From Euprymna scolopes (lineage: Eukaryota): a stretch of 64,000 nucleotides of DNA. The stretch lies in NCBI GenBank assembly GCA_053919585.1, contig CM132794.1. One strand, written 5' to 3'. Of the stretch, positions 1-60,350 are shown piece after piece (position 1 is the first letter of the stretch; the number at the start of each line of letters is the position of its first letter). The notes under the pieces are model-generated. The model was given only the letters and a program-made list of their open reading frames with translations. It ran no database searches and was not told the DNA's origin. Position numbers and translations under genes: made by a program.

Positions 1-210
1 ATTTCCCATTCTTGGCGGTCGCAAAGTAGGATCTCCACTAACTTTTGCAAGTATTTTTTCCTTTATGCCGTCACAAATCTATTTCCAAAACACCATTTCT
101 TCTTATCTCCGATTAGGAAAGTAATATTTCCCCTTCTTGGCGGTCGCAAAGCAGGATGTCCACTAACTTTTGCAAGTATTTTTTCCTTTATGACGTCACA
201 AATCTATATC

Positions 211-39300: not shown

Positions 39301-42300
39301 AATATTTCCCCTTCTTGGCGGTCGCAATGCAGGATCTCCACAACTTTTGCAAGTAATTTGTCCTTTATGACGTCACAAATCTATTTCCAAAACCTCATTT
39401 CTACTTTTTACTCACATTAGGAAAGTAATATTTCCCCTTTTCGGTGGTCGCAAAGCAGGATCTGCACTAACTTTTGCAAGTATTTTTTCCTTTGTGACGT
39501 CACAAATCTTTTTCCAAAACACCATTTCTACTTCTCTCCGATTAGGAAAGTAATATTTCCCTTTCTTGGCGGTCGGAAAGCAGGATCTCCACTAACTTTA
39601 GCGAGTATTTTTCCTTTATGACGTCACAAATCTATTTCTAAAACACCATTTCTACTTGATAAATTCTCTCCGATTAGGAAAGTAATATTTCCCCTTCTTG
39701 GCGGTCGCAAAGCAGAATCTCCACTAACTTTTGCAAGTATTTTTTCCTTTATGACGTCACAAATCTATTTCCAAAACACCATTTCTCTCCGATTTGGAAA
39801 GTAAGATTTCCCCTTCTTGGCGGTCGCAAAGCAGGATCTCCACTAACTTTTGCAAGTATTTTTCCATTATGACGTCATAAATCTATTTCCAACACCATTT
39901 CTACTTGATAAACTCTCTCCGATTAGGAAAGTAATATTTCCCCTTCTTGGCGGTCGCAAAGCAGGATCTCCACAAACTTTTGCAAGTATTTTCCTCTATG
40001 ACGTAACAAATCTATTTCCAAAACACCATTTCTACTTCTGTCCGATTAGGAAAGTAAAATTTACCATTCTTGGTTGTCGCAAAGCAGGATCTCCACTAAC
40101 TTTTGCAAGTATTTTTCCTTTATGACGTCACAAATCTATTTCCAAAACACCATTTCTACTTGATAAATTTTCTCCGATTAGGAAAGTAATATTTCCCCTT
40201 CTTGGCGGTCGCAAAGCAGGATCTCAACTAACTTTTGCAAGTATTTTTCCTTTATGACGTCACAAATCTATTTCTAAAACACCATTTCTACTTCTCTCCG
40301 ATTAGGAAAGTAATATTTCCCCTTCTTGGCGGTCGCAAAGCAGGATCTCCACTAACTTTGTCAAGTATTTTTCCTTTCTGACGTCACAAATCTATTTCCA
40401 AAACACCATTTCTACTTCTCTCCGATTAGGAAAGTAATATTTCCACTTCTTGGCGGTCGCAAAGCAGGATCTCCACTAACTTTGCAAGTATTTCTTCGTT
40501 TATGACGTCACAAATCTATTTCCAAAACACCATTTCTACTTCTCTCCGATTAGGAAGGTAATATTTCCCCTTCTTGGCGGTCGCAAAGCAGGATCTCCAC
40601 TAACTTTTGCAAGTATTTTTTCATTTATGACGTCACAAATCTATTTCCTAAACACCATTTCTCTCCGATAAGGCAGTAATATTTCCCCTTCTTGGCGGTC
40701 GCAAAGCAGGATCTCCACTAACTTCTGCAAGTATTTTTCCATTATGACGTCAAAAATCTATTTCCAAAACTCCATTTCTACTTGATAAATTCTCTCCGAT
40801 TAGGAAAGTAGTAGTTCCCCTTCTTGGCGGTCGCAAAGCAGGATCTCCACTAACTGTTGCAAGTATGGTTCCTTTATGACGTCACAAATCTATTTCCAAA
40901 ACACAATTTCTACTTGATAAATTCTCCCCGATTAGGAAAGTAATATTTCCCCTTCTTGGCGGTCGCAAAGCAGGATCTCCACTAACTTTTGCAAGTATTT
41001 TTCCTTTATGACGTAACAAATCTATTTCTAAAACACTATTTCTACTTCTCTCCGATTAGAAAAGTAATATTTCCCCTTCTTGGCGGTCGCAAAGCAGGAT
41101 CTCCACTAACTTTGCAAGTATTTTTTCCTTTATGACGTCACAAATCTATTTCCAAAACAGCATTTCTACTTCTCTCCGATTAGGAAAGTAATATTTCCCT
41201 TTTCCTGGCGGTCGCAAAGCAGGATCTCCACTAACTTTTTCGAGTATTGTTCATTTATGACGTCACAAATCTATTTCCTAAACACCATTTCTCTCCGACA
41301 GGAAAGTAATATTTCCCCTTCTTGGCGGTCGCAAAGCAGGATCTCCACTAACTTTTGCAAGTATTTTTCCTTTATGACGTCACAAATCTATTTCCAAAAC
41401 ACCATTTATTTCCGATTAGGAAAGTAATATTTCCCCTTCTTAGCGGTCGCAATGCAGGATCTCCACAAATTTTGCCAGTATTTTTTCCTTTATGACGTCA
41501 CAAATCAATTTCCAAAACATCATTTCTACTTCTTACTCACATTAGGAAAGTAATATTTCCCCTTTTCGGCGGTCGCAAAGCAGGATCTGCACTAACTTTT
41601 TCAAGTATTTTTTCCTTTGTGACGTCACAAATCTTTTTCCAAAACACCATTTCTACTTCTCTCCGATTAGGAAAGTAATATTTCGCCTTCTGGGCGGTCG
41701 CAAAGCAGGATCTCCACGAACTTTTGCAACTAGTTTTTCCTTTATGACGTCACAAATCTATTTCCAAAACACCATTTCTACTTCTCTCCGATTAGGAAAG
41801 TAATATTTCCCCTTCTTGTCGGTCGCAAAGCAGGATCTCCACTAACTTTTGCAAGTATTTTTTCCTTTATGACGTCACAAATCTATTTCCAAAACACCAT
41901 TTCTCTCCGATTAGGAAAGTAATATTTCCCCTTCTTGGCGGTCGCAAAGCAGGATCTCCACTAACTTCTGCAAGTATTGTTCCATTATGACGTCAAAAGT
42001 CTATTTCCAAAACTCCATTTCTACTTGATAAATTCTCTCCGATTAGGAAAGTAATATTTCCCCTTCTTGGCGGTCGCAAAGCAGGATCTCCACAAACTGT
42101 TGACAGTATTTTTCCTTTATGACGTCACAAATCTATTTCCAAAACACCATTTCTACTTGATAAATTCTCCCCGAGTAGGAAAGTAATATTTCCCCTTCTT
42201 GGCGGTCGCAAAGCAGAATCTCCACTAACTTTTGCAAGTATTTTTTCCTTTATGACGTCACAAATCTATTTCCAAAACACCATTTCTCTCCGATTAGGAA

Positions 42301-45049
42301 AGTAATATTTCCCCTTCTTGGCGGTCGCAAAGCAGGATCTCCACTAACTTTTGCAAGTATTTTTCAATTATGACGTCATAAATCTATTTCCAACACACCA
42401 TTTCTACTTGATAAACTCGCTCCGATTAGGAAAGTAATATTTCCCCTTCTTGGCGGTCGCAAAGCAGGATCTCCACAAACTTTTGCAAGTATTTTCCTCT
42501 ATGACGTAACAAATCTATTTCCAAAACACCATTTCTACTTCTGTCCGATTAGGAAAGTAATATTTACCATTCTTGGGTGTCGCAAAGCAGGATCTCCACT
42601 AACTTTTGCAAGTATTTTTCCTTTATGACGTCACAAATCTATTTCCAAAACACCATTTCTACTTGATAAATTCTCTCCGATTAGAAAAGTAATATTTCCC
42701 CATCTTGGCGTTCGCAAAGCAGGATCTCCACTAACTTTTGCAAGTATTTTTCCTTTATGACATCACAAATCTTTTTCCAAAACACTATTTCTACTTCTCT
42801 CCTATTAGGAAAGTAATATTTCCCCTTCTTGGCGGTCGCAAAGCAGGATCTCCACTAACTTTTTCAAGTATTTTTCCTTTATGACGTCACAAATCTAGTT
42901 CCAAAACACCATTTCTACTTCTCTCCGATAAGGAAAGTAATATTTCCCCTTCTTGGCGGTCGCAAAGCAGGATCTCCACTAACTTTGCAAGTATTTCTTC
43001 GTTTATGACGTCACAAATCTATTTCCAAAACACCATTTCTACTTCTCTCCGATTAGGAAGGTAATATTTCCCCTTCTTTGCGGTCGCAAAGCAGGATCTC
43101 CACTAACTTTTGCAAGTATTTTTTCATTTATGACGTCACAAATCTATTTCCTAAACACCATTTCTCTCCGATAAGGAAGTAATATTTACCCTTCTTGGCG
43201 GTCGCAAAGCAGGATCTCCACTAACTTCTGCAAGTATTTTTCCATTATGACGTCAAAAATCTATTTCCAAAACTCCATTTCTACTTGATAAATTCTCTCC
43301 GATTAGGAAAGTAATAGTTCCCCTTCTTGGCGGTCGCAAAGCAGGATCTCCACTAACTGTTGCAAGTATGGTTCCTTTATGACGTCACAAATCTATTTCC
43401 AAAACACAATTTCTACTTGTATAAATTCTCCCCGATTAGGAAAGTAATATTTCCCCTTCTTGGCGGTCGCAAAGCAGGATCTCCACTAACTTTTGCAAGT
43501 ATTTTTCCTTTATGACGTAACAAATCTATTTCTAAAACACCCATTTCTAATGCTCTCCGATTAGAAAAGTAATATTTCACCTTCTTGGCGGTCGCAAAGC
43601 AGGATCTCCACAAACTGTTGACAGTATTTTTCCTTTATGACGTCCCAAATCTATTTCCAAAACACCATTTCTACTTGATAAATTCTCCCCGAGTAGGAAA
43701 GTAATATTTCCCCTTCTTGGCGGTCGCAAAGCAGAATCTCCACTAACTTTTGCAAGTATTTTTCCTTTATGACATCACAAATCTTTTTCCAAAACACTAT
43801 TTTTACTTCTCTCCGATTAGGAAAGTAATATTTCCCCTTCTTGGCGGTCGCAAAGCAGGATCTCCACTAACTTTTGCAAGTATTTTTCCTTTATGACCTC
43901 ACAAATCTAGTTCCAAAACACCATTTCTACTTCTCTCCGATAAGGAAAGTAATATTTCCCCTTCTTGGCGGTCGCAAAGCAGGATCTCCACTAACTTTGC
44001 AAGTATTTCTTCGTTTATTACGTCACAAATCTATTTCCAAAACACCATTTCTACTTCTCTCCGATTAGGAAGGTAATATTTCCCCTTCTTGGCGGTCGCA
44101 AAGCAGGATCTCCACTAACTTTTGCAAGTATTTTTTCATTTATGACGTCACAAATCTATTTCCTAAACACCATTTCTCTCCGATAAGGAAGTAATATTTA
44201 CCCTTCTTGACGGTCGCAAAGCAGGATCTCCACTAACTTCTGCAAGTATTTTTCCATTATGACGTCAAAAATCTATTTCCAAAACTCCATTTCTACTTGA
44301 TAAATTCTCTCCGATTAGGAAAGTAATAGTTCCCCTTCTTGGCGGTCGCAAAGCAGGATCTCCACTAACTGTTGCAAGTATTGTTCCTTTATGACGTCAC
44401 AAATCTATTTCCAAAACACAATTTCTACTTGTATAAATTCTCCCCGATTAGGAAAGTAATATTTCCCCTTCTTGGCGGTCGCAAAGCAGGATCTCCACTA
44501 ACTTTTGCAAGTATTTTTCCTTTATGACGTAACAAATCTATTTCTAAAACACCCATTTCTAATGCTCTCCGATTAGAAAAGTAATATTTCACCTTCTTGG
44601 CGGTCGCAAAGCAGGATCTCCACTAACTTTGCTAGTATTTTTTCCTTTATGACGTCACAAATCTATTTCCAAAACAGCATTTCTACTTCTCTCCGATTAG
44701 GAAAGTAATATTTCCCTTTTCTTGGCGGTCGCAAAGCAGGATCTCCACTAACTTTTTCGAGTATTGTTCATTTATGACGTCACAAATCTATTTCCTAAAC
44801 ACCATTTCTCTCCGACAGGAAAGTAATATTTCCCCTTCTTGGCGGTCGCAAAGCAGGATCTCCACTAACTTTTGCAAGTATTTTTCCTTTATGACGTCAC
44901 AAATCTATTTCCAAAACACCATTTCTTCTTCTATCGAATCATCCAATATCAAATATTTCCCCCTCTTGGCGGTCGCAAAGCAGGATCTCCACTAACTTTT
45001 GCAAGTATTTTTTCCTTTATGACGTCACAAATCTATTTCCAAAATACCA

Positions 45050-48000
45050 TTTCTAATTCTCTCCGATTAGAAAAGTAATATTTCCCCTTCTTGGCGGTCG
45101 CAAAGCAGGATCTCCACTAACTTTGCAAGTATTTTTTCCTTTATGACGTCACAAATCTATTTCCAAAACAGCATTTCTACTTCTCTCCGATTAGGAAAGT
45201 AATATTTCCCTTTTCTTGGCGGTCGCAAAGCAGGATCTCCACTAACTTTTTCGAGTATTGTTCATTTATGACGTCACAAATCTATTTCCTAAACACCATT
45301 TCTCTCCGACAGGAAAGTAATATTTCCCCTTCTTGGCGGTCGCAAAGCAGGATCTCCACTAACTTTTGCAAGTATTTTTCCTTTATGACGTCACAAATCT
45401 ATTTCCAAAACACCATTTCTTCTTCTATCCAATAATCCAATATCCAATATTTCCCCCTCTTGGCGGTCGCAAAGCAGGATCTCCACTAACTTTTGCAAGT
45501 ATTTTTTCCTTTATGACGTCACAAATCTATTTCCAAAATACCATTTCTACTTGATGAATTCTCTCCGAGTAGGAAAGTAATATTTCCCCTTCTTGGCGGT
45601 CGCAAAGCAGGATCTCCACTAACTTTTGCAAGTATTTTTCCTTTATGACGTAACAAATCTATTTCTAAAACACCATTTCTAATTCTCTCCGATAAGAAAA
45701 GTAATATTTCCCCTTCTTGGCGGTCGCAAAGCAGGATCTCCACTAACTTTGCAAGTATTTTTTCCTTTATGACGTCACAAATCTATTTCCAAAACAGCAT
45801 TTCTACTTCTCTCCGATTAGGAAAGTAATATTTCCCTTTTCTTGGCGGTCGCAAAGCAGGATCTCCACTAACTTTTTCGAGTATTGTTCATTTATGACGT
45901 CACAAATCTATTTCCTAAACACCATTTCTCTCCGACAGGAAAGTAATATTTCCCCTTCTTGGCGGTCGCAAATCAGGATCTCCACTAACTTTTGCAAGTA
46001 TTTTTCCTTTATGACGTCACAAATCTATTTCCAAAACACCATTTCTTCTTCTATCCAATAATCCAATATCCAATATTTCCCCCTCTTGGCGGTCGCAAAG
46101 CAGGATCTCCACTAACTTTTGCAAGTATTTTTTCCTTTATGACGTCACAAATCTATTTCCAAAATACCATTTCTACTTGATGAATTCTCTCCGAGTAGGA
46201 AAGTAATATTTCCCCTTCTTGGCGGTCGCAAAGCAGGATCTCCACTAACTTTTGCAAGTATTTTTCGTTTATGACGTAACAAATCTATTTCTAAAACACC
46301 ATTGCTAATTCTCTCCGATTAGAAAAGTAATATTTCCCCTTCTTGGCGGTCGCAAAGCAGGATCTCCACTAACTTTGCAAGTATTTTTCCTTTATGACGT
46401 CACAAATCTATTTCCAAAACACCATTTCTTCTTCTATCCAATAATCCAATATCCAATATTTCCCCCTCTTGGCGGTCGCAAAGCAGGATCTCCACTAACT
46501 TTCGCAAGTATTTTTTCCTTTATAACGTCACAAATCTATTTCCAAAATACCATTTCTACTTGATGAATTCTCTCCGAGTAGGAAAGTAATATTTCCCCTT
46601 CTTGGCGGTCGCAAAGCAGGATCTCCACTAAATTATAGTATTTTTTCCTTTATGACGTCACAAATCTGTTTCCAAAACACCATTTCTACTTCTCTCCGAT
46701 TAGGAAAGTAATATTTCCCCTTCTTGGCGGTCGCAAAGCAGGATCTCCACTAACTGTTGCGAGTATTTTTCGTTTATGACGTCACAAATCTATTTCCAAA
46801 ACACCATTTCTACTTTATAAACTCTCTCCGATTAGGAAAGTAATATTTCCCCTTCTTGGCGGTCGCAAAGCAGGATCTCCACTAACTTTTGCAAGTATTT
46901 TTTCCTTTATGACGTCACAAATCTATTTCCAAAATACCATTTCTACTTGATGAATTCTCTCCGAGTAGGAAAGTAATATTTCCCCTTCTTGGCGGTCGCA
47001 AAGCAGGATCTCCACTAACTTTTGCAAGTATTTTTTCCTTTATGACGTCACAAATCTGTTTCCAAAACACCATTTCTACTTCTCTCCGATGTGGAAAGTA
47101 TTATTTCCCCTTCTTGGCGGTCGCAAAGCAGGATCTCCACTAACTTTTGCGAGTATTTTTCGTTTATGACGTCACAAATCTATTTCCAAAACACCATTTC
47201 TACTTGATAAACTCTCTCCGATTAGGAAAGTAATATTTCCCCTTCTTGGCGGTCGCAAAGCAGGATCTCCATTAACTTTTTCAAGTATTTTTCCTTTATT
47301 ACGTCACAAATCTATTTCCAAAACTCCGATTGGGAAAGTAATATTTCCTCTTCTTGGCGGTCGCAAAGCAGGATGTCCACTAACTTTTTCGAGTATTGTT
47401 CATTTATGACGTCACAAATCTATTTCCTAAACACCATTTCTCTCCGACAGGAAAGTAATATTTCCCCTTCTTGGCGGTCGCAAAGCAGGATCTCCACTAA
47501 CTTTTGCAAGTATTTTTCCTTTATGACGTCACAAATCTATTTCCAAAACACCATTTCTTCTTCTATCGAATAATCCAATATCAAATATTTCCCCCTCTTG
47601 GCGGTCGCAAAGCAGGATCTCCACTAACTTTTGCAAGTATTTTTTCCTTTATGACGTCACAAATCTATTTCCAAAATACCATTTCTACTTGATTAATTCT
47701 CTCCGAGTAGAGAAAGTAATATTTCCCCTTCTTGGCGGTCGCAAAGCAGGATCTCCACTAACTTTTGCAAGTATTTTTCCTGTATGACGTAACAAATCTA
47801 TTTCTAAAACACCATTTCTAATTCTCTCCGATTAGAAAAGTAATATTTCCCCTTCTTGGCGGTCGCAAAGCAGGATCTCCACTAACTTTGCAAGTATTTT
47901 TTCCTTTATGACGTCACAAATCTATTTCCAAAACAGCATTTCTACTTCTCTCCGATTAGGAAAGTAATATTTCCCTTTTCTTGGCGGTCGCAAAGCAGGA

Positions 48001-50135
48001 TCTCCACTAACTTTTTCGAGTATTGTTCATTTATGACGTCACAAATCTATTTCCTAAACACCATTTCTTTCCGACAGGAAAGTAATATTTCCCCTTCTTG
48101 GCGGTCGCAAAGCAGGATCTCCACTAACTTTTGCAAGTATTTTTCCTTTATGACGTCACAAATCTATTTCCAAAACACCATTTCTTCTTCTATCCAATAA
48201 TCCAATATCCAATATTTCCCCCTCTTGGCGGTCGCAAAGCAGGATCTCCACTAACTTTTGCAAGTATTTTTTCCTTTATGACGTCACAAATCTATTTCCA
48301 AAATACCATTTCTACTTGATGAATTCTCTCCGAGTAGGAAAGTAATATTTCCCCTTCTTGGCGGTCGCAAAGCAGGATCTCCACTAACTTTTGCAAGTAT
48401 TTTTCCTTTATGACGTAACAAATCTATTTCTAAAACACCATTTCTAATTCTCTCCGATAAGAAAAGTAATATTTCCCCTTCTTGGCGGTCGCAAAGCAGG
48501 ATCTCCACTAACTTTGCAAGTATTTTTTCCTTTATGACGTCACAAATCTATTTCCAAAACAGCATTTCTACTTCTCTCCGATTAGGAAAGTAATATTTCC
48601 CTTTTCTTGGCGGTCGCAAAGCAGGATCTCCACTAACTTTTTCGAGTATTGTTCATTTATGACGTCACAAATCTATTTCCTAAACACCATTTCTCTCCGA
48701 CAGGAAAGTAATATTTCCCCTTCTTGGCGGTCGCAAATCAGGATCTCCACTAACTTTTGCAAGTATTTTTCCTTTATGACGTCACAAATCTATTTCCAAA
48801 ACACCATTTCTTCTTCTATCCAATAATCCAATATCCAATATTTCCCCCTCTTGGCGGTCGCAAAGCAGGATCTCCACTAACTTTTGCAAGTATTTTTTCC
48901 TTTATGACGTCACAAATCTATTTCCAAAATACCATTTCTACTTGATGAATTCTCTCCGAGTAGGAAAGTAATATTTCCCCTTCTTGGCGGTCGCAAAGCA
49001 GGATCTCCACTAACTTTTGCAAGTATTTTTCCTTTATGACGTAACAAATCTATTTCTAAAACACCATTGCTAATTCTCTCCGATTAGAAAAGTAATATTT
49101 CCCCTTCTTGGCGGTCGCAAAGCAGGATCTCCACTAACTTTGCAAGTATTTTTCCTTTATGACGTCACAAATCTATTTCCAAAACACCATTTCTTCTTCT
49201 ATCCAATAATCCAATATCCAATATTTCCCCCTCTTGGCGGTCGCAAAGCAGGATCTCCACTAACTTTCGCAAGTATTTTTTCCTTTATAACGTCACAAAT
49301 CTATTTCCAAAATACCATTTCTACTTGATGAATTCTCTCCGAGTAGGAAAGTAATATTTCCCCTTCTTGGCGGTCGCAAAGCAGGATCTCCACTAAATTA
49401 TAGTATTTTTTCCTTTATGACGTCACAAATCTGTTTCCAAAACACCATTTCTACTTCTCTCCGATTAGGAAAGTAATATTTCCCCTTCTTGGCGGTCGCA
49501 AAGCAGGATCTCCACTAACTGTTGCGAGTATTTTTCGTTTATGACGTCACAAATCTATTTCCAAAACACCATTTCTACTTGATAAACTCTCTCCGATTAG
49601 GAAAGTAATATTTCCCCTTCTTGGCGGTCGCAAAGCAGGATCTCCACTAACTTTTGCAAGTATTTTTTCCTTTATGACGTCACAAATCTATTTCCAAAAT
49701 ACCATTTCTACTTGATGAATTCTCTCCGAGTAGGAAAGTAATATTTCCCCTTCTTGGCGGTCGCAAAGCAGGATCTCCACTAACTTTTGCAAGTATTTTT
49801 TCCTTTATGACGTCACAAATCTGTTTCCAAAACACCATTTCTACTTCTCTCCGATGTGGAAAGTAATATTTCCCCTTCTTGGCGGTCGCAAAGCAGGATC
49901 TCCACTAACTTTTGCGAGTATTTTTCGTTTATGACGTCACAAATCTATTTCCAAAACACCATTTCTACTTGATAAACTCTCTCCGATTAGGAAAGTAATA
50001 TTTCCCCTTCTTGGCGGTCGCAAAGCAGGATCTCCATTAACTTTTTCAAGTATTTTTCCTTTATTACGTCACAAATCTATTTCCAAAACTCCGATTGGGA
50101 AAGTAATATTTCCTCTTCTTGGCGGTCGCAAAGCA
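45050..50135 (+). repeat. Higher-order repeat, 2765-bp period (~22 monomers, ~2 copies) with internal 626/383-bp sub-repeats
   Basis: ORFs 45366/48131, 45992/48757 and 46375/49140 are all offset by 2765. The deletion variant CAAAACTCCGATTGGG occurs at ~47320 and ~50085. Confidence 0.88.
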
Positions 50136-52344
50136 GGATCTCCACTAACTTTTTCGAGTATTTTTCATTTATGACGTCACAAATCTATTTCCTAAACACC
50201 ATTTCTCTCCGATAAGGAAAGTAATATTTCCCCTTCTTGGCGGTCGCAAAGCAGAATCTCCACTAACTTTTGCAAGTATTTTTTCCTTTATGACGTCACA
50301 CATCTGCTTCCAAAACACCATTTCTACTTCTCTCCGATTAGGAAAGTAATATTTCCCCGTCTTTGCGGTCGCAAAGCAGGATCTCCACTAACTTTTGTAA
50401 GTAGTTTTCCTTTATGACGTCACAAATCTATTTCCAAAACACCATTTCTACTTCTCTCCGATTAGTAAAGTAATATTTCCCCTTCTTTGCGGTCGCAAAG
50501 CAGGATCTTCACTAACTTTTGCAAGTATTTTTTCCTTTATGGCGTCACAAATCTATTTCCAAAACACCATTTCTACTTGATAAATTTTCTCCGATTAGGA
50601 AAGTAATATTTACCCTTCTTGGCGGTCGCAAAGCAGGATCTCCACTAACTTTTTCAAGTATTTTTCCTTTATGACGTCACAAATCTATTTCCAAAACACC
50701 ATTTCTACTTCTCTTCGATTAGGAAAGTAATATTTCCCCTTCTTGGCGGTCGCAAAGCAGGATCTCCACTAACTTTTGCACGTATTTTTCCTTTATGACG
50801 TCACAAATCTATTTCCAAAACACCATTTCTACTTCTCTCCGATTAGGAAAGTAATATTTCCCCTTCTGGGATGTCGCAAAGCAGGATCTCCACTAACTGT
50901 GTCAAGTATTTGTCCTTTCTGACGTCACAAATCTATTTCCAAAACACCATTTCTACTGCTCTCCGATTAGGAAAGTAATATTTCCCCTTCTTGGCGGTCG
51001 CAAAGCAGGATCTCCATTAACTTTTGCAAGTATTTTTTCCTTTATGACGTCACAAATCTATTTCCAAAACACCATATCTACTTCTCTCCGATTAGGAAAG
51101 TAATATTTCCCCTTTCTTGGCGGTCGCAAGCATTTTTTGTTATAAAGTTTATACTTGCGGGATCATCACCAATGTTTCTGTAGTTAAAACAATCAAGTGT
51201 TAATTGTCCTACACTAGCAAGTAACAATTAACGAGATTAAATTCGAGACGCTGTTGTCAAAATTCACTAATCAAAATCCGATATTGCTTCCAAAAATGCG
51301 AGTTTTTTACTCCAAAATACGATGTGCTATTTAGAATACTTGCTGTCCCCACGTTTAAATCCCAAATCAATGCAGTGTCTGAAAAGGCAGGCTTTTTTTT
51401 CAAACCGGAAGCATGTGATTTGCATATTAGGTGACACATCACAAGTGTATAAAGAGAAACGACGGCCATTTTATTTTTGTTTGTCTTCGTTCTTTTTTAT
51501 TTACTGCACGGGACACTACAGGCTGCACAAAGCAGGTGTACCGATTTTTAGAGCGTTTAATCACAGAAGAGTGACGTATATTGCTTTGGATAGCATTTCA
51601 GACCATATTTCCTTTGTGATATTTTTATTTGTGATGGCAGAAAGCTATTTGCCAAACAAAATCAACTCTATGAATTCGCTCTGTTTTGGCAAATAATACT
51701 TTCTTTTATGACGCCACGAAGCATTTGTATTTGTTTGGTTTGTTTGTTTTGTTTTTTTGGGGGGGGTGTTTTTTGTTTTCAAAAAATGTTAATACTTGTA
51801 ATATCCTCCTCAATTTTCTGGTGACGCTGCAAATTTTGTAAAAACAACATTCATACGTAATGAATTTGCTCCGCTTTTGTCAGAAACTTATTTTATTATT
51901 TCGTCATAAATGTGTTTTTTATTTTTGTTTTTTGTTTTGTTTTTTACAAATAATGTTTCTTCTTGTGAGATCGTCACCAATTCTTCTACGTAAATCTATC
52001 CGTTTTGACGCCACAGCCTTTGTATGAAATAACATCTATACTTGATGAATTAACTCCGATATATCCAGGTGTATTGTTCCTTTATGTCACAACAATGCAT
52101 ATTTAAATAAAGTTTATTCTTGCAGAATACTCACTAATTTTCAAAAGTATTTTTTATTATTTTATGACGCTAGAGAAGTATTTCCCAAACAACGTCTATA
52201 CTTGATAAATTCAATCTGCTTTAACCGAGTAATATTTTTCTTTTATGATTCCACATAATGTTTTATACTTACGGAATCGCTACTTATTTTCCGAATAAAT
52301 TTTATTCTTTTTAACGCTACAAAGTTTTGCACCAAACAACTATA

Positions 52345-52743
52345 TTTTTTATATACGCATTTTTAGTAATATTTTTATATACGCATTTTTAGTAATATTT
52401 TTTAAATACGCATTTTTAGTAATATTATTTTATATATGCATTTTAGTAATATTTTTTATATACGCATTTTTAGTAATATTTTTTATATACGCATTTTAGT
52501 AATATTTTTTATATATGCATTTTTAGTAATATTTTTATATACGCATTTTTAGTAATATTTTTATATACGCATTTTAGTAATATTTTTTATATACGCATTT
52601 TTAGTAATATTTTTATATACGCAGTTTTAGTAATATTTTTATGTACGCATTTTTAGTAATATTTTTATCTACGCATTTTAGTAATATTTTTTATATGCGC
52701 ATTTTAGTAATATTTTTATATACGCATTTTCAGTAATATTTTT
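52345..52743 (+). repeat. Minisatellite, 15 copies of ~26-bp ATATACGCATTTTTAGTAATATTTTT
   Basis: Units counted directly. Variation is mostly in T-run length. Confidence 0.95.
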
Positions 52744-52858
52744 ATTTTGTGACGGTATAAAACGTTGTGCCAAATAAAGTTTTTACTTGCGGATCCTCAA
52801 CATTTGTCCGAAATAATTATTTATTTTATGGCGCTATAAAGCTTTGTATCAAACAACA

Positions 52859-53011
52859 TTTAACCCTTCCAAACCTGCACAGTTGATAGCTAAAAAGACG
52901 GCACGGTCGATAGATCAGCCTTTTAATAATACGTTAACAAATGATTGTGCTAATCACTTATCGTCTTTTGTGCTAATTATTGCATAAATGGGTCACTGTT
53001 CCAAGGTTTAA
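52859..53011. mobile_element. Possible piggyBac-type MITE (~145 bp) with TTAA target duplication
   Basis: Starts TTAA-CCCTT and ends AAGGT-TTAA (one mismatch to AAGGG-TTAA). It splits a relic satellite subunit. The inverted repeat is very short. Confidence 0.4.
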
Positions 53012-53156
53012 TGAATTCGCTCTGATTTGGCCAAATATATTTTTATATTGTGACGAGCCAAGGTCTTTTTTTCCGAAATAAAGTGCATACTTGCGTAATC
53101 CTTACTTATTTTGACAAAGAAATTTTATCCTTTATGACGTCATAAAGATTTGTACC

Positions 53157-53159
<3 letters not shown>

Positions 53160-53222
<63 letters not shown>
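53160..53222. repeat. (TA)n microsatellite
   Basis: About 31 TA units. Confidence 0.97.
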
Positions 53223-53229
<7 letters not shown>

Positions 53230-53554
53230 ATATGATGAATAGCCTTCGCTTTAGCAAAGTAATATTTTTGCATGTGACGCCTCATATGTTTGTATAAATA
53301 AAGTCCTAACCAATTTTTCTAATAAATGTTAACCTTTTATGACGTCAGAAACCAATTTCCCAAATAGCATCAACATTTGGTGAATTAACTCCGTTTTAAC
53401 CACGTAATATTTTCCCCTTATATCGCCACAAAGCAGCTCTTAAAATAAACTTAATACTTGCAATAACCTACGTGACGAATACGCTCGGATTTAGCTCAGT
53501 AATTTTTATACTTTATGACGCCACAAAATCTCTATTTCAAACAACGTCTGTATT

Positions 53555-54345
53555 TAGTTAGGGTTGTAGATTCCGTGATTGATTAAATATTAAAATGAAT
53601 ACGTATGCATTAGATACGTTTGAAAGCCAAATCACAACGCAATATTATGAATGATAAAAATATTTATTTGTTTTTCTTTCTTGCCACGGTGTTGAGTTGA
53701 AGAAGAAAATCAGTTATTAAAAGAAAGTCCAAATGTTGTTCCTCTTTAGTGTTTTTTTTTGTTGTTAATGCAGGAAGGGCGTTTGCTACGCGATATTCAG
53801 TTAAGGTTGTAGGTTTCGTAACAGAAGCGTTGATTAAATTTTAAAAGGAATACTATGTATACGTTTGAAAGCCAAATCACAACGCAAGGTTATGACGCCA
53901 CAAATCTCTATTTCAAACAACGTCTGTATTTAGTTAGGGTTGTAGATTCCGTGATAGAAACGTTGATTAAATATTAAAATGAATGCGTATGCATTAGATA
54001 CTTTTGAAAGCCAAATCACAACGCAATATTATGAATGATAAAAATATTTATTTGTTTAAAATTAATATATTTCGAAGTAAAATTCATCTTCAGAATGTTG
54101 TCCATTTTAATTCTTTTTGTTTTCTTTCTTGCCACGGTGTTGAGTTGAAGAAGAAAATCAGTTATTAATGTATACGTTTGAAAGCCAAATCACAACGCAA
54201 GGTTATGAAGGATAAACAATATTTATTTCTTTAAAATTGATATATTTCTGCAAACTATATTAATTTTAAACAAATAAATATTGTTTATCCTTCATAATAT
54301 TTCGTCGTGATTTGGCTTTAAAACGTATCTCATACATACGTATTA
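53555..54345. repeat. Second repeat family (~250-310-bp unit), rearranged tandem copies ending in an inverted copy
   Basis: GTTAGGGTTGTAGATTCC and ATACGTTTGAAAGCCAAATCACAACGCAA recur several times. 54172-54244 and 54256-54328 form an imperfect inverted pair. Confidence 0.8.
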
Positions 54346-54638
54346 ATCTCAACATCTACATTTGAATCAATTTTTTCCGCATTTGTAAAGTAGCATTTTC
54401 CCTTTATGATACCACCAAGTATTTTTTTCATAAAGTATATACTTGTGGAATCTGTACATATTTTTTCTTAGGGTTTTTATCCTTCAAAAGACAACAAATT
54501 ATTTTACATTTTATGTTTTGTTTTGCTTTTATTTCAATAATAAAGTTTATATTTGCGGCATCCTCAGCAATTTTTTAAAATACGTTTCCTCTTTTATAAC
54601 TTAAAACTGTTTGATGAACTCACCACGTTTTTTGAAAG

Positions 54639-54640
<2 letters not shown>

Positions 54641-54711
<71 letters not shown>
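54641..54711. repeat. (TA)n microsatellite
   Basis: About 35 AT units. Confidence 0.97.
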
Positions 54712-54714
<3 letters not shown>

Positions 54715-54956
54715 CTTGTTTATTGTTATATAAACATGCTCACATCCCGCTGCTACAAATAGCCACTTGTTTGAATCAAACAACAGATATCATCAGGCAG
54801 CGACTTGACTATTCAAAAGTTCAATGAATAATCGTTATTCATTGAACTTTTGAATAGTCAAGTCGCTGCCTGATGATATCTGTTGTTTGATTCAAACAAG
54901 TGGCTATTTGTAGCAGCGGGATGTGAGCATGTTTATACAACAATAAACAAGTATTA
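54710..54956. repeat. Near-perfect palindrome, 122-bp arms, 3-nt loop; probable inverted pseudo-LTR remnant of a Penelope-like element
   Basis: 54710-54831 is the reverse complement of 54835-54956 with one mismatch (loop TCG). It lies between two (TA)n tracts and contains a hammerhead-like motif. The palindrome is seen directly; the Penelope-like origin is inferred. Confidence 0.85.
54864..54918 (+). ncRNA. Type I hammerhead ribozyme-like motif with mutated core (CAAA instead of GAAA); mirror copy on the minus strand at 54748-54802
   Basis: Stem I CGCTGC/GCAGCG; core CTGATGA (54870-54876); weak stem II ATC/GAT; CAAA; stem III ACAAGT-ggct-ATTTGT; cleavage triplet GTA. Confidence 0.65.
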
Positions 54957-55035
54957 TCAGCTCTTTTTATTGAGCACTATCTAACAACCTCGTTGAATTC
55001 ATTAGTCCATTACTTTTGAATATAAAAAAACCCGA

Positions 55036-55036
<1 letters not shown>

Positions 55037-55105
<69 letters not shown>
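55037..55105. repeat. (TA)n microsatellite, two interruptions
   Basis: Read directly. Confidence 0.95.
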
Positions 55106-55198
55106 TAAGTAATGTGATTGATACTTTAAAATTTAAAAATCAAATTTTAATTAAATTAAAAATCCCTTTCATAAGAAGGAACAACAACAAAATCAATT

Positions 55199-55308
55199 AT
55201 CTGTACGATCGTTTCGGAAAACAATGCTTTTTTATTGTGGTATACATCAAGTTATGTACAATAATTATATATAGTTTTTTGATAAGCAAGGTCTCCTCAT
55301 CAGCAAAT
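55199..55308 (-). ncRNA. Type I hammerhead ribozyme motif in the PLE 3' region
   Basis: Minus strand reads ATTTG-CTGATGA-GGAGAC..(~68 nt)..GTTTTCC-GAAA-CGATCG-TA-CAGAT. The catalytic core is intact; stem I has 5 bp (one G-U), stem II is GGAGA/TTTCC, stem III is the palindromic minimal ACGATCGT, and the cleavage triplet is GUA (cut between 55204 and 55203). Confidence 0.8.
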
Positions 55309-55877
55309 TTTGAAGGGTTTTCATTGAATTTAAAAGACACCATAAATAAACCTAGCATTAAAAGTAAGGCAGATGAATCTGAAAAATTGAAATAAAAGAT
55401 CTGGATTTAAAATTTATAAGAAAATTAATATGGGTTAGAGATAGAAATAAGTAGAGAAAAATATATATTTTTGAATTTACATAATAAATTTGCTTTAAAA
55501 ATATATAGAGATATTTACCTTTTAATTTTTCGTTTTTTGAAATCAGGATATGTGGTTAAAATAGTCATTTAGATGTTTGCTATAGCTTTTTATCTTATTG
55601 AATGATGAATTTTAAAAGGGGGGGACGCTCGTGCAATAAATTGTTTCCGTTAGCGTATTTTTGATTTAAAGACGCTACGGTTTATATATATAGAGAATAT
55701 TACTATTACATATTTTAAGGGGAGATAATTGTCATGTTTTCTTTATTTTATTTATTTGAAGGGTGTAAGGGAGATAATTAGTCTAACTTAATTTATTAAG
55801 AAAAAAAAATAATAATAATAATAATAAAAGTAATAATAATTGTAATCTATTTTTACTAATAAGTAATTTTTAATGAT

Positions 55878-56829
55878 TTAAGGTGGTTTATATTTATTAA
55901 ATTTAAACCAACGTTTATGACTACATGTCATAAGCTCCTGTCTTGAATTTAATTGTTTGGTTGTATTTTTTATATCTTCATATTTTAAAATTTTTAGGGT
56001 CTCTTTTGTACATAGTGCACAAAATTTATCTCCTGGTTTATATGATTTGCAAGTCTCAATTATTTGCTATTTTAAGTTGAAAGAAATATTGCTGTTTTTT
56101 AGTTGCCAAATATAGTTGGATAGAGTAGTTTGGTTTGACAGAGAGTTATTTTTAAAAGAATGTTTGTGCGTTGAAATTCTATGTTTTATTAGGCCAGATG
56201 TGGAACCAAAATATATTACCTCTTGCTTGTTGTGATTATTTTCCGTTAGGTCTGTTGTTGGATTATTATATGGTGGGTTGATTAGTAATTGATCGGTAGA
56301 TTGGTTTAAGTTGGTGTTATTATTTAATCTGGTAGTTGAGTTATGGCTGTTAATAGGTTCATGTAGATTTGGAGTTTTTGATACTGTGCTGCTATAGATA
56401 ATATTTTTAATTTTACATGAGCCTTGTAGGGGACATTTATTTTTTCTTCTACAGTTACAGTCCGATGTATTTTGTATAGTTGTATTTTGTTGTTTATTAA
56501 TTTTCTTATTATTAGAGCTAATTATTTTCTGATGAAGGTTAGGCATAGTAGAGTAAGAGACTTTAATTGTGTTCTTATTGAAAATGTTATTATATCTATG
56601 GGGGGCTTTAAAGTTCTTATCTAATATTTTAAAAAATTCTCTGGCTATGTTTGTTTCTAGGTTTTTTGGAATATGGGGGGTTGAACCATAGGATCTCCTT
56701 GTGTCTATTCTTACGTTTACGGGTTTTGGTTTGCTGTTTATTTGTATTATTTAATATTTGTGGTTTGGTTTTATCTTTTTTTGTCTCTTGGTTATTTTTC
56801 TTAACTCGTATACGGGAAGACATTGCCAT
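55878..56829 (-). pseudogene. PLE polyprotein C-terminus (linker + GIY-YIG endonuclease), with a frameshift and a premature stop
   Basis: Reconstruction: RKRKNRHKEILWFNPPYSK /fs ~56665/ LETNIAREFFKILDKNF..IFNKNTIKVSYSTMPN..CNCRRKNKCPLQGSC..NIIY..YFGST..KHRISTHKHSF..TLSNYIWQLK..LK*(TAG at the expected Trp, 56067)QIIETCKSYKPGDKFCALCTKE..LNSRQELMTCSHKRWF..PP*. The WFNPP, CxCx5C, CxxC and LN.R.EL..C.H motifs are typical of PLE endonucleases. The CxCx5C linker suggests the Naiad group (from recollection; needs phylogeny). Confidence 0.9.
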
Positions 56830-56861
56830 ATTATATGTTATTATATTATATATATATATAT

Positions 56862-57580
56862 TACTCGTGTTCCCCCCTTACGAAGCATATGCATATCGAC
56901 ACTTGGACGTAAGGGGCTACTATTTGGGGCCATGTCTAGGAAAGATTAAACAAGATATTTGCTTGTGTTACATTTAAACTTCTGCATATCAGTACAGCCA
57001 GGGAAGGAGGCAGCAGAAAGGGAATTCCAAGGTCTAGCTGTTCGAGGGAAGAAACTATAAGAATAGAAAGCTTTCTGGCATTTAGGGACAACAACAATGA
57101 AGGGGTGAGATCTTATTGCTAAGCGCGTTTGTCGGGGATATGTACGTCGAGGGGGTACAAGTGAAACGAATTCACCGGATCACATTCCATTAAAATACTT
57201 GTAAAACAGGCGCAGTGATGCAACATTGCGGCTATGAGACAGGGGCTAGAGCTTAGTTGATAAAGAGAGGCCGATTAGATTGGCAACTTATTTTTGGACT
57301 TTATCTAAGAGGGAGAAACTAATTGCAGATGCAGCAGCCCAGATGTGGCAACAATACCCCATCCATGGGCGAATGGTGGCCTTGTAAAAGTACAGGATAC
57401 TGTCAGGCGTGAGTAGTCTTCTAATTCGATAGAGGGAGCCCATCTTCTTTGCAGCAGCCTTTGCAATATCCTCTATGTATTTGTTCCAGTTCATATTGCC
57501 CGCAAATGTTAGGCTGAGGAGTTTGAAGGTAGAATTCTCAGGTAGGGTGCTATTTGTTATGGATATAGGCGGTTGGAGAG
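56862..57580 (-). mobile_element. CR1/L2-group LINE 3' fragment (post-RT region of ORF2 plus 3' UTR), decayed
   Basis: MNWNKYIEDIAKAAAKKMGSLYR..YKATIRPWMGYCCHIWA..LLDKVQK, continuing after a frameshift as PLSHSRNVASLRLFYKYFNG..SHPF..SFFPRTARPWNSL..FKCN, with the stop near 56946. Confidence 0.85.
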
Positions 57581-57730
57581 TTTAACTTTATTACGCCACA
57601 ATCATTTTTTTCTCTAAATATATATATATCCTTGCACGATCCTTACAAATTGTCCTGGGGCATTTCATACTTTATGACGCCAGAAAGCTATTTCGCAAAC
57701 AATATTAATACTTGATATGTTTACTCCTTT
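57581..57730 (+). repeat. Degenerate ancestral satellite, two subunits
   Basis: TTATTACGCCACAA..CTTGCACGATCCTTAC..TTTATGACGCCAGAAAGCTATTTCGCAAACAA..ATACTTGAT. Confidence 0.7.
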
Positions 57731-57840
57731 GCTTCTATCACAGAGCCTACATCCTTAACTGAAAATCGCGTAGTCAACGCTCTTCCGGAATTTCAAAAAA
57801 AAAACACTACAGAGGAACAACATGTGGAATTTCTTTTAAT

Positions 57841-57912
57841 AACCTCAAGCGCTGCAATATCCCTTCAATTTTTTGAGACTTTGGCAGCGGACAGAGATGC
57901 TTGGCGCAGTGA
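57841..57912 (+). mobile_element. Short fragment resembling the C-terminus of an RTE-clade LINE ORF
   Basis: NLKRCNIP../fs/ETLAADRDAWRS matches the LK...I....WE.LA.DR..WR pattern. It is very short. Confidence 0.45.
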
Positions 57913-58834
57913 TAGCTGAATGGCCTTCTTCAACAACGTGTGTGAGAAATTCCATATACGGCAGCCATCTTTTCTTGTTTGTCCGCCCACGCATTAGTGG
58001 TCGGCTGTCATTGGTTTAAATTTGAATGTGTCAGGTGATTGACTTGTCGCGCTTTTGTGTCATGCTTTCTTTTTCAGTCTAGACAAAACTCGGCATCGGA
58101 ATAGACTCAAAACCCAGTAGCTGCCACTGGAGGGAGCTAACACAATTCCTTCGTGAACACCAAACTGTTGGTGAACGAAGGACCACATCTCTACAAGCAG
58201 AGACTACTTATACTGCTGAATTTATCCTGATTGAGGATGGCATTCAAGAACTGTTCTGCATGTTTATTACCAAATATTGGATCTTATCTCAATTCATCTT
58301 GAGTCCCAAGAGGATCACATTCTGCCTAATTATAGGCATCATCACTCCCGCCGAGTTTACTATGAACATCCATGAATCCTTACGAGGAAGAACGAACTAA
58401 CATTCCAACAATAGGAATTCGAACTAAAGGCTCTATGCGTATGGGGACAAATCGGGCCACCGTTTTGCAAACGGACAATACCAGAACCAATAAACTTTCA
58501 TTGCTGTTACATTTGAATAAATTTTGAGTTTGAAAGGTATGGCTTTTGTAGTTGTGGATTCTTTCCTCTGCAGGGAGGAAACTGAGACGTGGGAAATAAA
58601 TTTCTCACATCTTCAACAACGAGCATGAGCGAGCAGCTATGAAGCGTCGCACACTGGTACACTGACGAACGGCAAGTACTCACCATCAAATCCCAAATCC
58701 TGTCTTCCTGAACTATATCTGCGCAAAGCAGTGCAGATCACGCCTCGGGCTTGACAGTCATCAAAGAAGTCACAGAGTCAATTAAAAAAAATGAACACAT
58801 CGTCATCCACATGGAGGGACTATCATAACTATAT

Positions 58835-59250
58835 TAAGTGATTAAAATAATATGCGTATTAGATACGCTTGAAGTAAAAGCCCATTATTACAAAATAGAC
58901 AGATATTTATTTTTGTTTGAAATTTCTAAATATATTTCGGAGCTACACGTCATCCTCAGTATTTCTCCCCCCCCCCCACATGTTGTTTTTGGAGCATAGA
59001 ATCAGGTAGTAGAAGTCCGTTTGTTGTTTTTCACGGTGGTGTTTTCAAATGTCGGAACAGTGCGTTGGTCACGCGGTATTCACGTTAGGGGTGTGTGTTC
59101 CTTGATAGAAGTGTTGATTGAGTTTGAATAAAATAAAACACGTATTAGATACGTTTGAAGCTAAAACAACGCATTATTACAAAATAAACAGACATTTATA
59201 TTGAAATTTATAAATATATTTCGAAGTTACACTTCATCTTCAGTATGTCT
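58835..59250 (+). repeat. Diverged tandem copies (~286-bp spacing) of the second repeat family
   Basis: ATTAGATACG(T/C)TTGAAG at ~58858 and ~59144, each followed by ATATATTTCG..CATC(C/T)TCAG as at 53994-54093. Confidence 0.7.
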
Positions 59251-59724
59251 TTCTTTTATCTTTTTAGTTAAGTGATATTTTTCTATATGACGTCACAAAG
59301 TATTTTTTCAAATAAAGCTTAAACTTGCAATGTCTTCACCAATTTTCTGAATGAATTTTATCTTTTATGACGTCACAAAGCTCTGTGTCAAGCAAACTCT
59401 ATACTTATAGAATTCGCTATGATTTTCTTAAGTTAGATTTTTCGTTTATAGCACCAAAAATCATTTATTCGAAATAAACTTCATATTTGTGGGATCCTCA
59501 TTTATTTGTACAAGTAAATTTTATCATTTATGGGACCACAAGTTCCTGTAAGAAATTACATATATGCATGAGAAATTCAATCTGTTTTGGCCAAGCAAAA
59601 TGTTGCTTTATGACGTCAGAAAGGATTATTCTGTAAAAAAAGTATCCCTGCAATATTTTCACCGATTTTTAAATAAATTTTATCATTTATGACGCCAAAA
59701 ACTTTCTTCTGTACAAACACTATA

Positions 59725-59919
59725 TAGTATAACCCGGATATAATAAAACCGAATATAAGAAAAACGGATATAAGAGAGATTTTATCTGCTTCCAAATTAG
59801 AACCTGTTTTAATGTACAGTGTAACCCGGATATAAAAAAAGGATATAAGTGGAACCCGGATATAAGAGATATTAAGGTCCCTCTGCCCATACGAAGTCTC
59901 TTATATACGGGTTATACTG
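59725..59919. mobile_element. Tc1/mariner-pogo(Tigger)-type MITE with TA target duplication
   Basis: TA-[TAGTATAACCCGGATATAA ... TTATATACGGGTTATACTG]-TA, i.e. ~19-bp TIRs with 2 mismatches, plus internal CGGATATAA repeats. Confidence 0.85.
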
Positions 59920-60350
59920 TATTTAATTAATTTGCGCTGATTTAACAAATTAATAGTTTTCGTTTATGATTCCAAAAAGCATTTTATTTTTCAAATAAAG
60001 TTTTTCCTTATCAATTTTGACAAGAAATTTTTATTTTTTATTACGCCACAATTTTTTGTACTAAACGATATATATAGATGGTGAATTCACTCCGCTTTAG
60101 CAAGGTTATATTTTCCTGTATAAGGCCAAAGAGCATGTTTGTATGAATTTGATTTATACTTGCGGAATCCCCCCACCACCCAATTTTCTCAATGATTTTT
60201 CCTTTATACCGCCAGAAAACTATTTCCCAAACAACTTCAACATTTGATAAATTCACTCAGATTTAACCAAGTAACGTTTTCGTTTATTGCGCCATAAAGC
60301 ATTTTATATGAGTAAATTAATGCCTGCAATATTCTCAACAATTTTTGAAT

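What the first reader, a model, noticed from the sequence alone, without database searches (positions are those of the whole stretch)
51060..51180. Birth of a satellite frozen at the array edge: the terminal unit retains the 27 bp whose deletion created the modern monomer
Seen: array units read CAAAGCA|GGATCTCCAC, but the last unit reads CAAGCA-[TTTTTTGTTATAAAGTTTATACTTGCG, 51133-51159, 27 bp]-GGATCATCACC. This extra segment matches the AAATAAAGTTTATACTTGCGGAATCC motif of the decayed repeats downstream. The modern monomer is 53 bp (A half) + 80 bp (B half), and 53+27=80. Inference: an old 80+80 bp dimeric satellite lost 27 bp in one copy, and that 133-bp variant amplified to >51 kb in place and in register with its ancestor.
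Basis: partly seen in the sequence, partly recalled or inferred. Interest (0 to 1): 0.78.

Follow-up and report, generated by a model that had tools for sequence, protein, structure and literature searches.

The report
Single-locus satellite with founding edges
An 86-kb tandem repeat found at only one place in a large mollusc (probably squid) genome still shows, at both ends, the older decayed 80-base repeat it grew from, including the 27 bases missing from every modern unit; this is a clear example of a known way that satellite DNA arises.

Summary
The array ends at window 51132. The next 27 bases (51133-51159) are absent from every unit junction inside the array and are followed by diverged repeat sequence. 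They are ancestral. They are 72% identical to the matching segment of 14 "A-type" relic subunits (z=6.3), and a profile built only from other chromosomes places them correctly (0 of 1000 shuffles).

- **Flanks:** both hold same-strand ~80-bp relics. On the right, 12 of 13 adjacent pairs alternate A/B.
- **Array:** 86.2 kb, about 670 monomers, in length classes of 133, 125 and 118 bp.
- **Single locus:** all 583 genome-wide matches to the unit junction lie in this array.
- **Left edge** (outside the window): it also keeps a 27-bp segment, so the array is exactly n x [a2-B-a1] lying between two copies of that segment.

The deletion route is not excluded.

A short-read contig spans the right junction without a difference. 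A contig from a second species label overlaps it by only 13 array-side bases.

This is a new member of a known kind. Earlier notes of this scan list other single-array satellites in the same genome.

The parts
1..51132 (+). Window part of the satellite array. The whole array is 86,207 bp (G000:C12:43736926-43823132), with about 670 monomers built as a2 (31 bp) - B (78 bp) - a1 (24 bp).
   Evidence: TRF; anchor spacing and consensus sequences; nhmmer segmentation gives 657 + and 13 - hits; 95% identity to consensus and 91% pairwise.
51108..51132 (+). Last a1 of the array (CCCCTTTCTTGGCGGTCGCAAGCA), still array-grade.
   Evidence: 22 of 23 aligned bases match the a1 consensus.
51133..51159 (+). 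x: the 27-bp ancestral middle segment of an A-type subunit. It is absent from every unit junction inside the array.
   Evidence: No x-like stretch (up to 7 mismatches) inside the array and no monomer longer than 149 bp.
51160..51178 (+). a2': relic-grade start of the next A subunit (GGATCATCACCAATGTTTC), cut short by an inserted element.
   Evidence: Read depth here is single-copy: 17 against about 11,700 on the array.
51179..51605 (.). Dispersed ~430-bp non-coding element inserted into the relic.
   Evidence: 195 candidate copies genome-wide at 66-84% identity. Eight fetched copies align over about 51179-51605.
51606..60344 (+). Zone of decayed ~80-bp subunits, all on the + strand and mostly alternating A and B types. 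Clear runs lie at 51923-52240, 52747-52905, 59285-59690 and 60204-60344. The zone is interrupted by other repeats and by a retroelement region at about 54.6-57.6 kb.
   Evidence: nhmmer; column alignment; 12 of 13 adjacent pairs on the right alternate A/B.

Best explanation
An old tandem repeat of ~80-bp subunits sits decayed at a few loci in this genome. At the C12 locus it had differentiated into alternating A and B subunits, giving a period of about 160 bp. The copies were already well diverged: today the nearest relics are about 72-80% identical to the array consensus.

A single out-of-register duplication then copied a 133-bp stretch running from the last third of one A (a2), through a whole B, to the first third of the next A (a1). 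The new joint a1|a2 (..AAAGCA|GGATCT..) formed where both partners end in GCA. The 27-bp middle of A (x) stayed outside the duplicated stretch on both sides.

Once two identical 133-bp copies lay side by side, unequal exchange or replication restart multiplied them to about 670 copies (86 kb). Later changes were 8-bp and ~15-bp deletions inside B (the 125- and 118-bp variants), block duplications of roughly 1.8-2.3 kb, small inversions and one LINE insertion.

Shown: the anatomy, the ancestry of x, the restriction to one locus, the register, and the junction in reads. Inferred: the one-step duplication and the GCA-mediated joining. No function is indicated; the array is most likely neutral satellite DNA.
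For: - **Left edge** (L004)...GGGGTCACAAAAAC-[TTGTGTCAAATGTAGATGATATTTGCA]-GGATCTCCACTAAC.... It has a relic-grade a1', a 27-bp x' (16/27 identical to x in the column alignment), then array-grade a2 from its first base (28/28).
- **Right edge:** array-grade a1 (22/23), then x, then relic-grade a2'. Array-like sequence is therefore a whole number of a2-B-a1 units bounded by x on each side.
- **Sharp step in identity:** edge monomers are 97-99% identical to the consensus, while the neighbouring relic B subunits are 72% on both sides. There is no gradient of divergence along the array.
- **Joint is fixed:** no monomer carries x and none exceeds 149 bp. The array's own deletion variants, by contrast, stay at 45/35/8% and are intermixed throughout. 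A deletion that swept to 670 of 670 would be unlike them.
- **Joint is unique to this locus:** all 258+3 exact matches, and all 574+9 matches with up to 3 mismatches, lie in this array.
- **A with x restored aligns almost gap-free with B** (z=4.5, against 2.7 and many gaps without x).
- **Same-strand relics on both flanks**, up to 17.8 kb to the left and 9.2 kb to the right. The 80-bp family is also present on C3, C14 and C44.
- **Reads:** an 845-nt short-read contig (run X1, 2019) covers 51100-51910 with no difference. Array depth over single-copy depth is about 680, which fits the roughly 670 assembled units.
Against: - The microhomology is only 3 bp (GCA), which chance gives about 1 time in 64. 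It would serve a 27-bp deletion between the GCA ending a1 and the GCG/GCA ending x equally well.
- A deletion-first path gives the same present-day anatomy, because the last x cannot be removed by exchange among units. That path would be: in-register amplification of young 160-bp units, loss of x in one of them, then a complete sweep.
- Gene conversion stopping at the 27-bp heterology could also sharpen both edges.
- No outgroup with the pre-duplication state was available.
- The left edge was read only from the assembly and was not checked with reads.
- Run X1 may come from the same animal as the assembly.
Confidence: 0.55

Rival explanations
1. Deletion first. The 160-bp A/B unit, or a young homogeneous run of such units, lost the 27 bp in one copy by slippage between GCA and GCG/GCA. 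The 133-bp variant then replaced all others by unequal exchange. Only the terminal x survived, because it has no array partner on its right.
For: It explains the right edge exactly. Short direct repeats flank x (GCA ... GCG). Small deletions clearly arise and spread in this array, as the 125- and 118-bp variants show. x is ancestral.
Against: It needs several steps and a complete sweep: 0 of about 670 units keep x, whereas the array's known deletion variants remain polymorphic. In its simplest form it predicts relic a2'-B' between the left x' and the array, and a relic-grade a1 before the right x. Neither is seen. Homologous exchange between neighbours that today match the array at only about 72-80% would have been inefficient (inference).
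Confidence: 0.35
2. The 27 bp are not ancestral. They would be an insertion into the last unit, a chance resemblance, or a product of misassembly at the array edge.
For: The segment is short and AT-rich. By itself it scores only -1.1 bits against the independent profile.
Against: 72% identity to 14 A-type relics, z=6.3. Correct placement by a profile built from other chromosomes, with 0-1 of 1000 shuffles reaching the score. A matching 27-bp segment sits at the left edge. A short-read contig spans the junction with no difference.
Confidence: 0.03
3. The satellite arose elsewhere, for example inside a mobile element, and was brought to this locus.
For: The 80-bp parent family occurs on several chromosomes. 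Many mollusc satellites are linked to mobile elements (general knowledge; review PMC9659126).
Against: The joint is found nowhere else in the assembly. Both flanks continue the repeat in phase and on the same strand. The A/B relic queries found only local matches.
Confidence: 0.04

Closest known systems
Smith (1976) unequal-exchange model of satellite origin, as summarised in PMC8997354
   Same: A first tandem duplication that needs no extensive homology, followed by out-of-register exchange between the copies, which expands and homogenises the array.
   Different: Here the founding duplication can be read directly. Both flanks keep the sequence that lay outside the duplicated 133 bp.
Layered expansion of centromeric satellites, in which young uniform repeats are flanked by older diverged ones (primate alpha satellite; PMC8997354)
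   Same: A homogeneous core (91% pairwise identity) lies between same-family, much more diverged relics on both sides.
   Different: There are only two layers, the array is 86 kb, and the new unit has a different length (133 bp against 160). Nothing here shows centromere function.
Birth of mini- and macrosatellites by slippage between short direct repeats: Haber & Louis 1998 and Taylor & Breden 2000, as described in PMC3389668
   Same: The unit is bounded by a short direct repeat (GCA before a2 and at the end of a1). The array is a whole number of units plus that repeat.
   Different: The repeat is 3 bp, not the 5-10 bp of the Haber-Louis cases. The unit is 133 bp, and the substrate was itself an old tandem repeat.
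Composite satellite monomers built from diverged subrepeats, such as the mouse major satellite made of ~58-bp subrepeats (from my own knowledge, not checked here)
   Same: The monomer is made of recognisably related shorter subunits (A with x restored against B, z=4.5).
   Different: In this case the missing piece of one subunit and the parent repeats are still present next to the array.

Membership tests
Satellite DNA (long homogenised tandem array) | Hundreds of head-to-tail copies of one unit | tested here: met
   About 670 monomer hits over 86,207 bp, 657 of them on the + strand.
Satellite DNA (long homogenised tandem array) | Copies much more alike than their relatives outside the array | tested here: met
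   91% pairwise and 95% to consensus inside the array; 72-80% for the nearest relics.
Layered satellite locus (young core, old flanks) | Older members of the same family on both sides, in the same orientation | tested here: met
   All relic subunits are on the + strand, on the left and on the right.
Layered satellite locus (young core, old flanks) | Association with the centromere | not testable with these tools
   No CENP-A or cytological data. The array lies at 43.8 Mb of a 155.8-Mb sequence.
Origin by slippage between short direct repeats (Haber-Louis) | Unit flanked by direct repeats of 5-10 bp | tested here: not met
   Only GCA (3 bp) is shared between ..TTTGCA|GGATC (left) and ..AAAGCA|TTTTTT (right).
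Origin by slippage at noncontiguous repeats (Taylor-Breden) | Terminal unit incomplete | tested here: inconclusive
   Array-like sequence is a whole number of units. The only 'extra' is the 3-bp GCA before the first unit.
Satellite derived from a mobile element | Monomer homologous to an internal part of a dispersed element with defined ends | tested here: inconclusive
   The parent 80-bp family was found only as short tandem clusters at a few loci on C3, C14, C44 and C12. No element ends were looked for.

The most novel reading that the evidence does not exclude
The 80-bp parent family, whose best-kept part is TTATGACGTCAC (it contains the palindrome TGACGTCA), could be an old chromosome-specific functional repeat, for example centromere-linked or bound by a bZIP-type factor. 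The C12 array, with 485 perfect palindromes, would then be its renewed version. Depth ratios hint at about 680 copies in one species label and about 60 in another, which would mean a tenfold change in size since their split.
Probability: 0.08. Interest if true: 0.6.

Novelty: new member of a known kind. Interest (0 to 1): 0.4.

Why it matters
The first duplication that founds a satellite is rarely visible, because later turnover erases the edges. Here both edges survive, the parent repeat lies alongside, and the joint is unique in the genome. The pre-duplication sequence can therefore be written down and looked for in related species. That makes it possible to test directly whether a satellite began as a one-step out-of-register duplication or as a deletion followed by a sweep, and to date its growth. 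The result would add a well-documented example; it would not change current views of satellite evolution.

Tried and rejected
- **Whole-genome DNA search with a monomer dimer:** it could not be scored because there were too many candidates. I replaced it with pattern searches across the joint.
- **Iterated profile seeded with a dimer that contained x**: this is circular for the question of x. I replaced it with a profile built only from C3 and C14 loci and with a comparison to relics excluding x.
- **A/B alternation over all flanks:** not significant (15 of 22 pairs, p=0.07), because the distal left flank is the undifferentiated 80-bp form. The claim holds for the right flank (12 of 13) and the proximal left flank.
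- **Ungapped lag analysis for higher-order repeats:** it gave only local block periods of about 1.8-2.3 kb and no array-wide higher-order unit.
- **Raw reads of run X5:** too thinly sampled (about 2% of the run) to cover the single-copy junction.
- **Literature:** paper searches found no description of this satellite or of cephalopod satellites of this kind.
- **My first reading of GTAGTT (51180-51185) as relic:** dropped, because the inserted element begins at about 51179.

Full report
**What is at the coordinates.** The window opens inside a tandem array that ends at 51132. The last bases of the array read ...CCCCTTTCTTGGCGGTCGCAAGCA. They are followed by TTTTTTGTTATAAAGTTTATACTTGCG (51133-51159, 27 bp) and then GGATCATCACC.... 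Inside the array the same place reads ...GTCGCAAAGCA|GGATCTCCAC.... The letters and coordinates of the finding are therefore correct.

**The array.** Fetching upstream sequence shows the array begins at L004:4926 (G000:C12:43736926). It is 86,207 bp long, not 51 kb.
- nhmmer segments it into 670 monomer hits, 657 on the + strand and 13 in small inverted blocks. A single 1.84-kb interruption encodes a reverse-transcriptase fragment (RVT_1, E=2.5e-34), so it is a truncated LINE.
- Monomers fall into three intermixed length classes. About 45% are 131-134 bp, 35% are 123-126 bp and 8% are 116-119 bp.
- The shorter classes are the 133-bp form minus 8 bp (TTGATAAA) or about 15 bp inside B. The relics carry TACTTGATGAAT at that place, so 133 bp is the older form.
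- Monomers are 95% identical to the consensus and 91% identical pairwise. There is no gradient toward the edges, and the first and last units are 98-99% identical to the consensus.

**The relics.**
- A profile of the 133-bp monomer finds same-strand matches from 51622 to 60289, with E-values down to 1e-10.
- Iterated searches resolve these into subunits spaced 76-85 bp apart. All are on the + strand. They extend to 60344 on the right and up to 17.8 kb upstream of the array on the left. None lie in the 20 kb beyond the window.
- In a column alignment two types stand out. A-type reads ..AAATAAAGTTTATACTTGCGGGATCCTCACCAATTTT... B-type reads ..CAAACAACATCTATACTTGATGAATTCACTCCGATTT...
- I classed each subunit only by the columns where the array's A (with the 27 bp restored) and B differ. 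On that basis 12 of 13 adjacent pairs in the right flank alternate, as does the proximal left flank.
- The distal left flank (13-18 kb away) is an undifferentiated 80-bp form.
- So the ancestor next to the array was an A/B dimer of about 160 bp. This agrees with another first-reader note on this window (s1-280031).

**Are the 27 bp ancestral?** Yes, on three counts.
1. With the 27 bp restored, the array's A half is 82 bp and aligns almost gap-free with the 78-bp B half (z=4.5 against shuffles). Without them the alignment is gappy and z=2.7.
2. The 27 bp are 72% identical on average to the same columns of 14 A-type relics, and 52% identical to B-type. Shuffled versions give 34 +/- 6% and none of 5000 reaches 72%.
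3. A profile built only from loci on two other chromosomes (C3 and C14) places x+a2' at the correct profile positions. None of 1000 shuffles reaches its score, and 1 of 1000 does for x alone.

**One locus only.** The 26-mer across the unit junction occurs 258 times forward and 3 times reverse in the 5.9-Gb assembly. With up to 3 mismatches the counts are 574 and 9. Every one of these lies in this array.

The A/B relic stretches used as queries match only this region. The generic 80-bp family does occur elsewhere as short, decayed, monomeric clusters, at C3:145.86 Mb, C3:124.1 Mb, C14:31.83-31.87 Mb and C44:26.65 Mb. The parent family is therefore old and present at a few loci, while the 133-bp satellite is a local product.

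**The left edge changes the reading.** L004 reads ...TATTTTATGGGGTCACAAAAAC-TTGTGTCAAATGTAGATGATATTTGCA-GGATCTCCACTAAC.... That is a relic-grade a1', a 27-bp x' (16/27 identical to x in the column alignment), and then array-grade a2 from its very first base (28/28).

At the right edge the order is array-grade a1 (22/23), then x, then relic-grade a2'. The neighbouring relic B subunits on both sides are 72% identical to the array's B. Array-like sequence is thus a whole number of a2-B-a1 units set between two x copies. Identity drops from at least 96% to 72-80% exactly at the x borders.

A single duplication of the 133-bp stretch a2-B-a1 predicts exactly this. The joint a1|a2 would be new, and x would simply lie outside the duplicated piece. 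Both partners of the joint end in GCA (..TTTGCA|GGATC on the left, ..AAAGCA|TTTTTT on the right). That is a 3-bp microhomology. It is suggestive, but it is weak evidence.

A deletion-first history can produce the same anatomy. It needs in-register amplification of young 160-bp units, loss of x in one of them, and then complete replacement of the rest. The last x would survive because it has no partner to its right.

Against it:
- Not one of about 670 units keeps x, and none exceeds 149 bp.
- The array's own deletion variants remain at intermediate frequencies everywhere.
- The simplest deletion model predicts relic a2'-B' between the left x' and the array, which is not there.
- I infer that exchange between neighbours that are now only about 72-80% alike would have been inefficient.

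I put the one-step duplication at about 0.55 and deletion first at about 0.35. Both share the core that is well supported: the 27 bp are ancestral, and the array was born in place from 1 2/3 subunits of an A/B repeat.

**What follows the 27 bp.**
- Bases 51160-51178 are relic a2'.
- From about 51179 to 51605 lies a dispersed ~430-bp non-coding element. It has 195 candidate copies at 66-84% identity, and eight fetched copies align over that span.
- The relic resumes at 51606, roughly in phase (within about 8 bp), with a B-type subunit at 51629.

**Reads.**
- An 845-nt contig from a 2019 short-read run of the same species label (X1) covers 51100-51910 with no difference, so the junction is not an assembly artefact. 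That run may, however, come from the sample that was assembled.
- Its depth is 17 on the single-copy flank and about 11,700 on the array. This gives about 680 copies, in line with the roughly 670 assembled.
- A 245-nt contig from a run under a different species label (X3) covers 51120-51348 with 8 differences and two indels, one of them a TT inserted after 51132. This suggests the edge and the inserted element predate the split of the two. It has only 13 bases on the array side, so it does not count as a bridge.
- In X3 the ratio of array depth to single-copy depth is about 60. That is a lead for a large difference in copy number, not a measurement.

**Organism.** Earlier notes of this scan call the genome a squid or mollusc. 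I did not test this. Its size (5.9 Gb) and at least 44 large sequences fit a decapodiform cephalopod (my own knowledge). Those notes also list other large single arrays with unrelated monomers elsewhere in this genome, so satellites of this general sort are common there.

**Comparison with what is known.**
- The picture matches the classical view of satellite origin. A first tandem duplication that needs little homology is followed by out-of-register exchange (Smith 1976, as summarised in PMC8997354).
- It also matches the layered pattern of young uniform repeats flanked by older diverged ones (same review).
- Models of repeat birth by slippage between short direct repeats (Haber & Louis 1998; Taylor & Breden 2000; described in PMC3389668) are the closest mechanistic relatives.
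- I found no paper describing this satellite.

**Verdict.** This is a new, clear member of a known kind, of moderate interest. No function is indicated and the array is most likely neutral.

Noticed in passing
L002:7874-9715 (G000:C12:43759874-43761715), inside the array: A 1.84-kb interruption of the array encodes a reverse-transcriptase fragment (RVT_1, E=2.5e-34) on the + strand. It is a truncated LINE inserted into the satellite.
   Followed up: partly
G000:C12:43742158-43742724, 43754663-43754910, 43756961-43757217: There are three to four small inverted blocks of 2-4 monomers inside an otherwise head-to-tail array (13 reverse hits out of 670).
   Followed up: no
array, whole length: Local block duplications have periods of about 1817, 2057, 2163 and 2288 bp (14-17 monomers). 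They point to recent growth by multi-unit steps. No single higher-order unit spans the whole array.
   Followed up: partly
window 1-51132 and relic subunits: Each B half carries the perfect palindrome TGACGTCA, 485 times in the 86-kb array. TTATGACG is also the best-kept part of the decayed 80-bp subunits at all loci, but the subunits were found with a profile that rewards that motif.
   Followed up: partly
L021:2680-2865 and 5050-5670 (C3:145.86 Mb); L022:4400-5710 and 9549-9601 (C14:31.83 Mb); also C44:26.65 Mb and C3:124.14 Mb: Other loci hold the parent ~80-bp repeat as short, decayed clusters of a single subunit type, with a consensus near TTATGACGTCACAAAGCTTTTTCCCAAATAAAATTTATACTTGATGAATCCACACCGCTTTACCCAAGTAAAATGTATCC.
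   Followed up: partly
window 51179-51605: A ~430-bp non-coding dispersed element has at least 195 candidate copies genome-wide at 66-84% identity. Parts of it show very high short-read depth. Its class was not determined.
   Followed up: partly
window 52346-52745: A 26-bp tandem repeat (15 copies, 92% matches) sits inside the relic zone. Long (TA)n runs at 53161, 54641 and 55037 lie around the palindrome and hammerhead region that other first-reader notes describe.
   Followed up: no
window 51120-51348, run X3: A contig from a run filed under a different species label carries the array edge, x and the inserted element at about 96% identity. The ratio of array depth to single-copy depth there is about 60, against about 680 in the main species.
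   Followed up: partly
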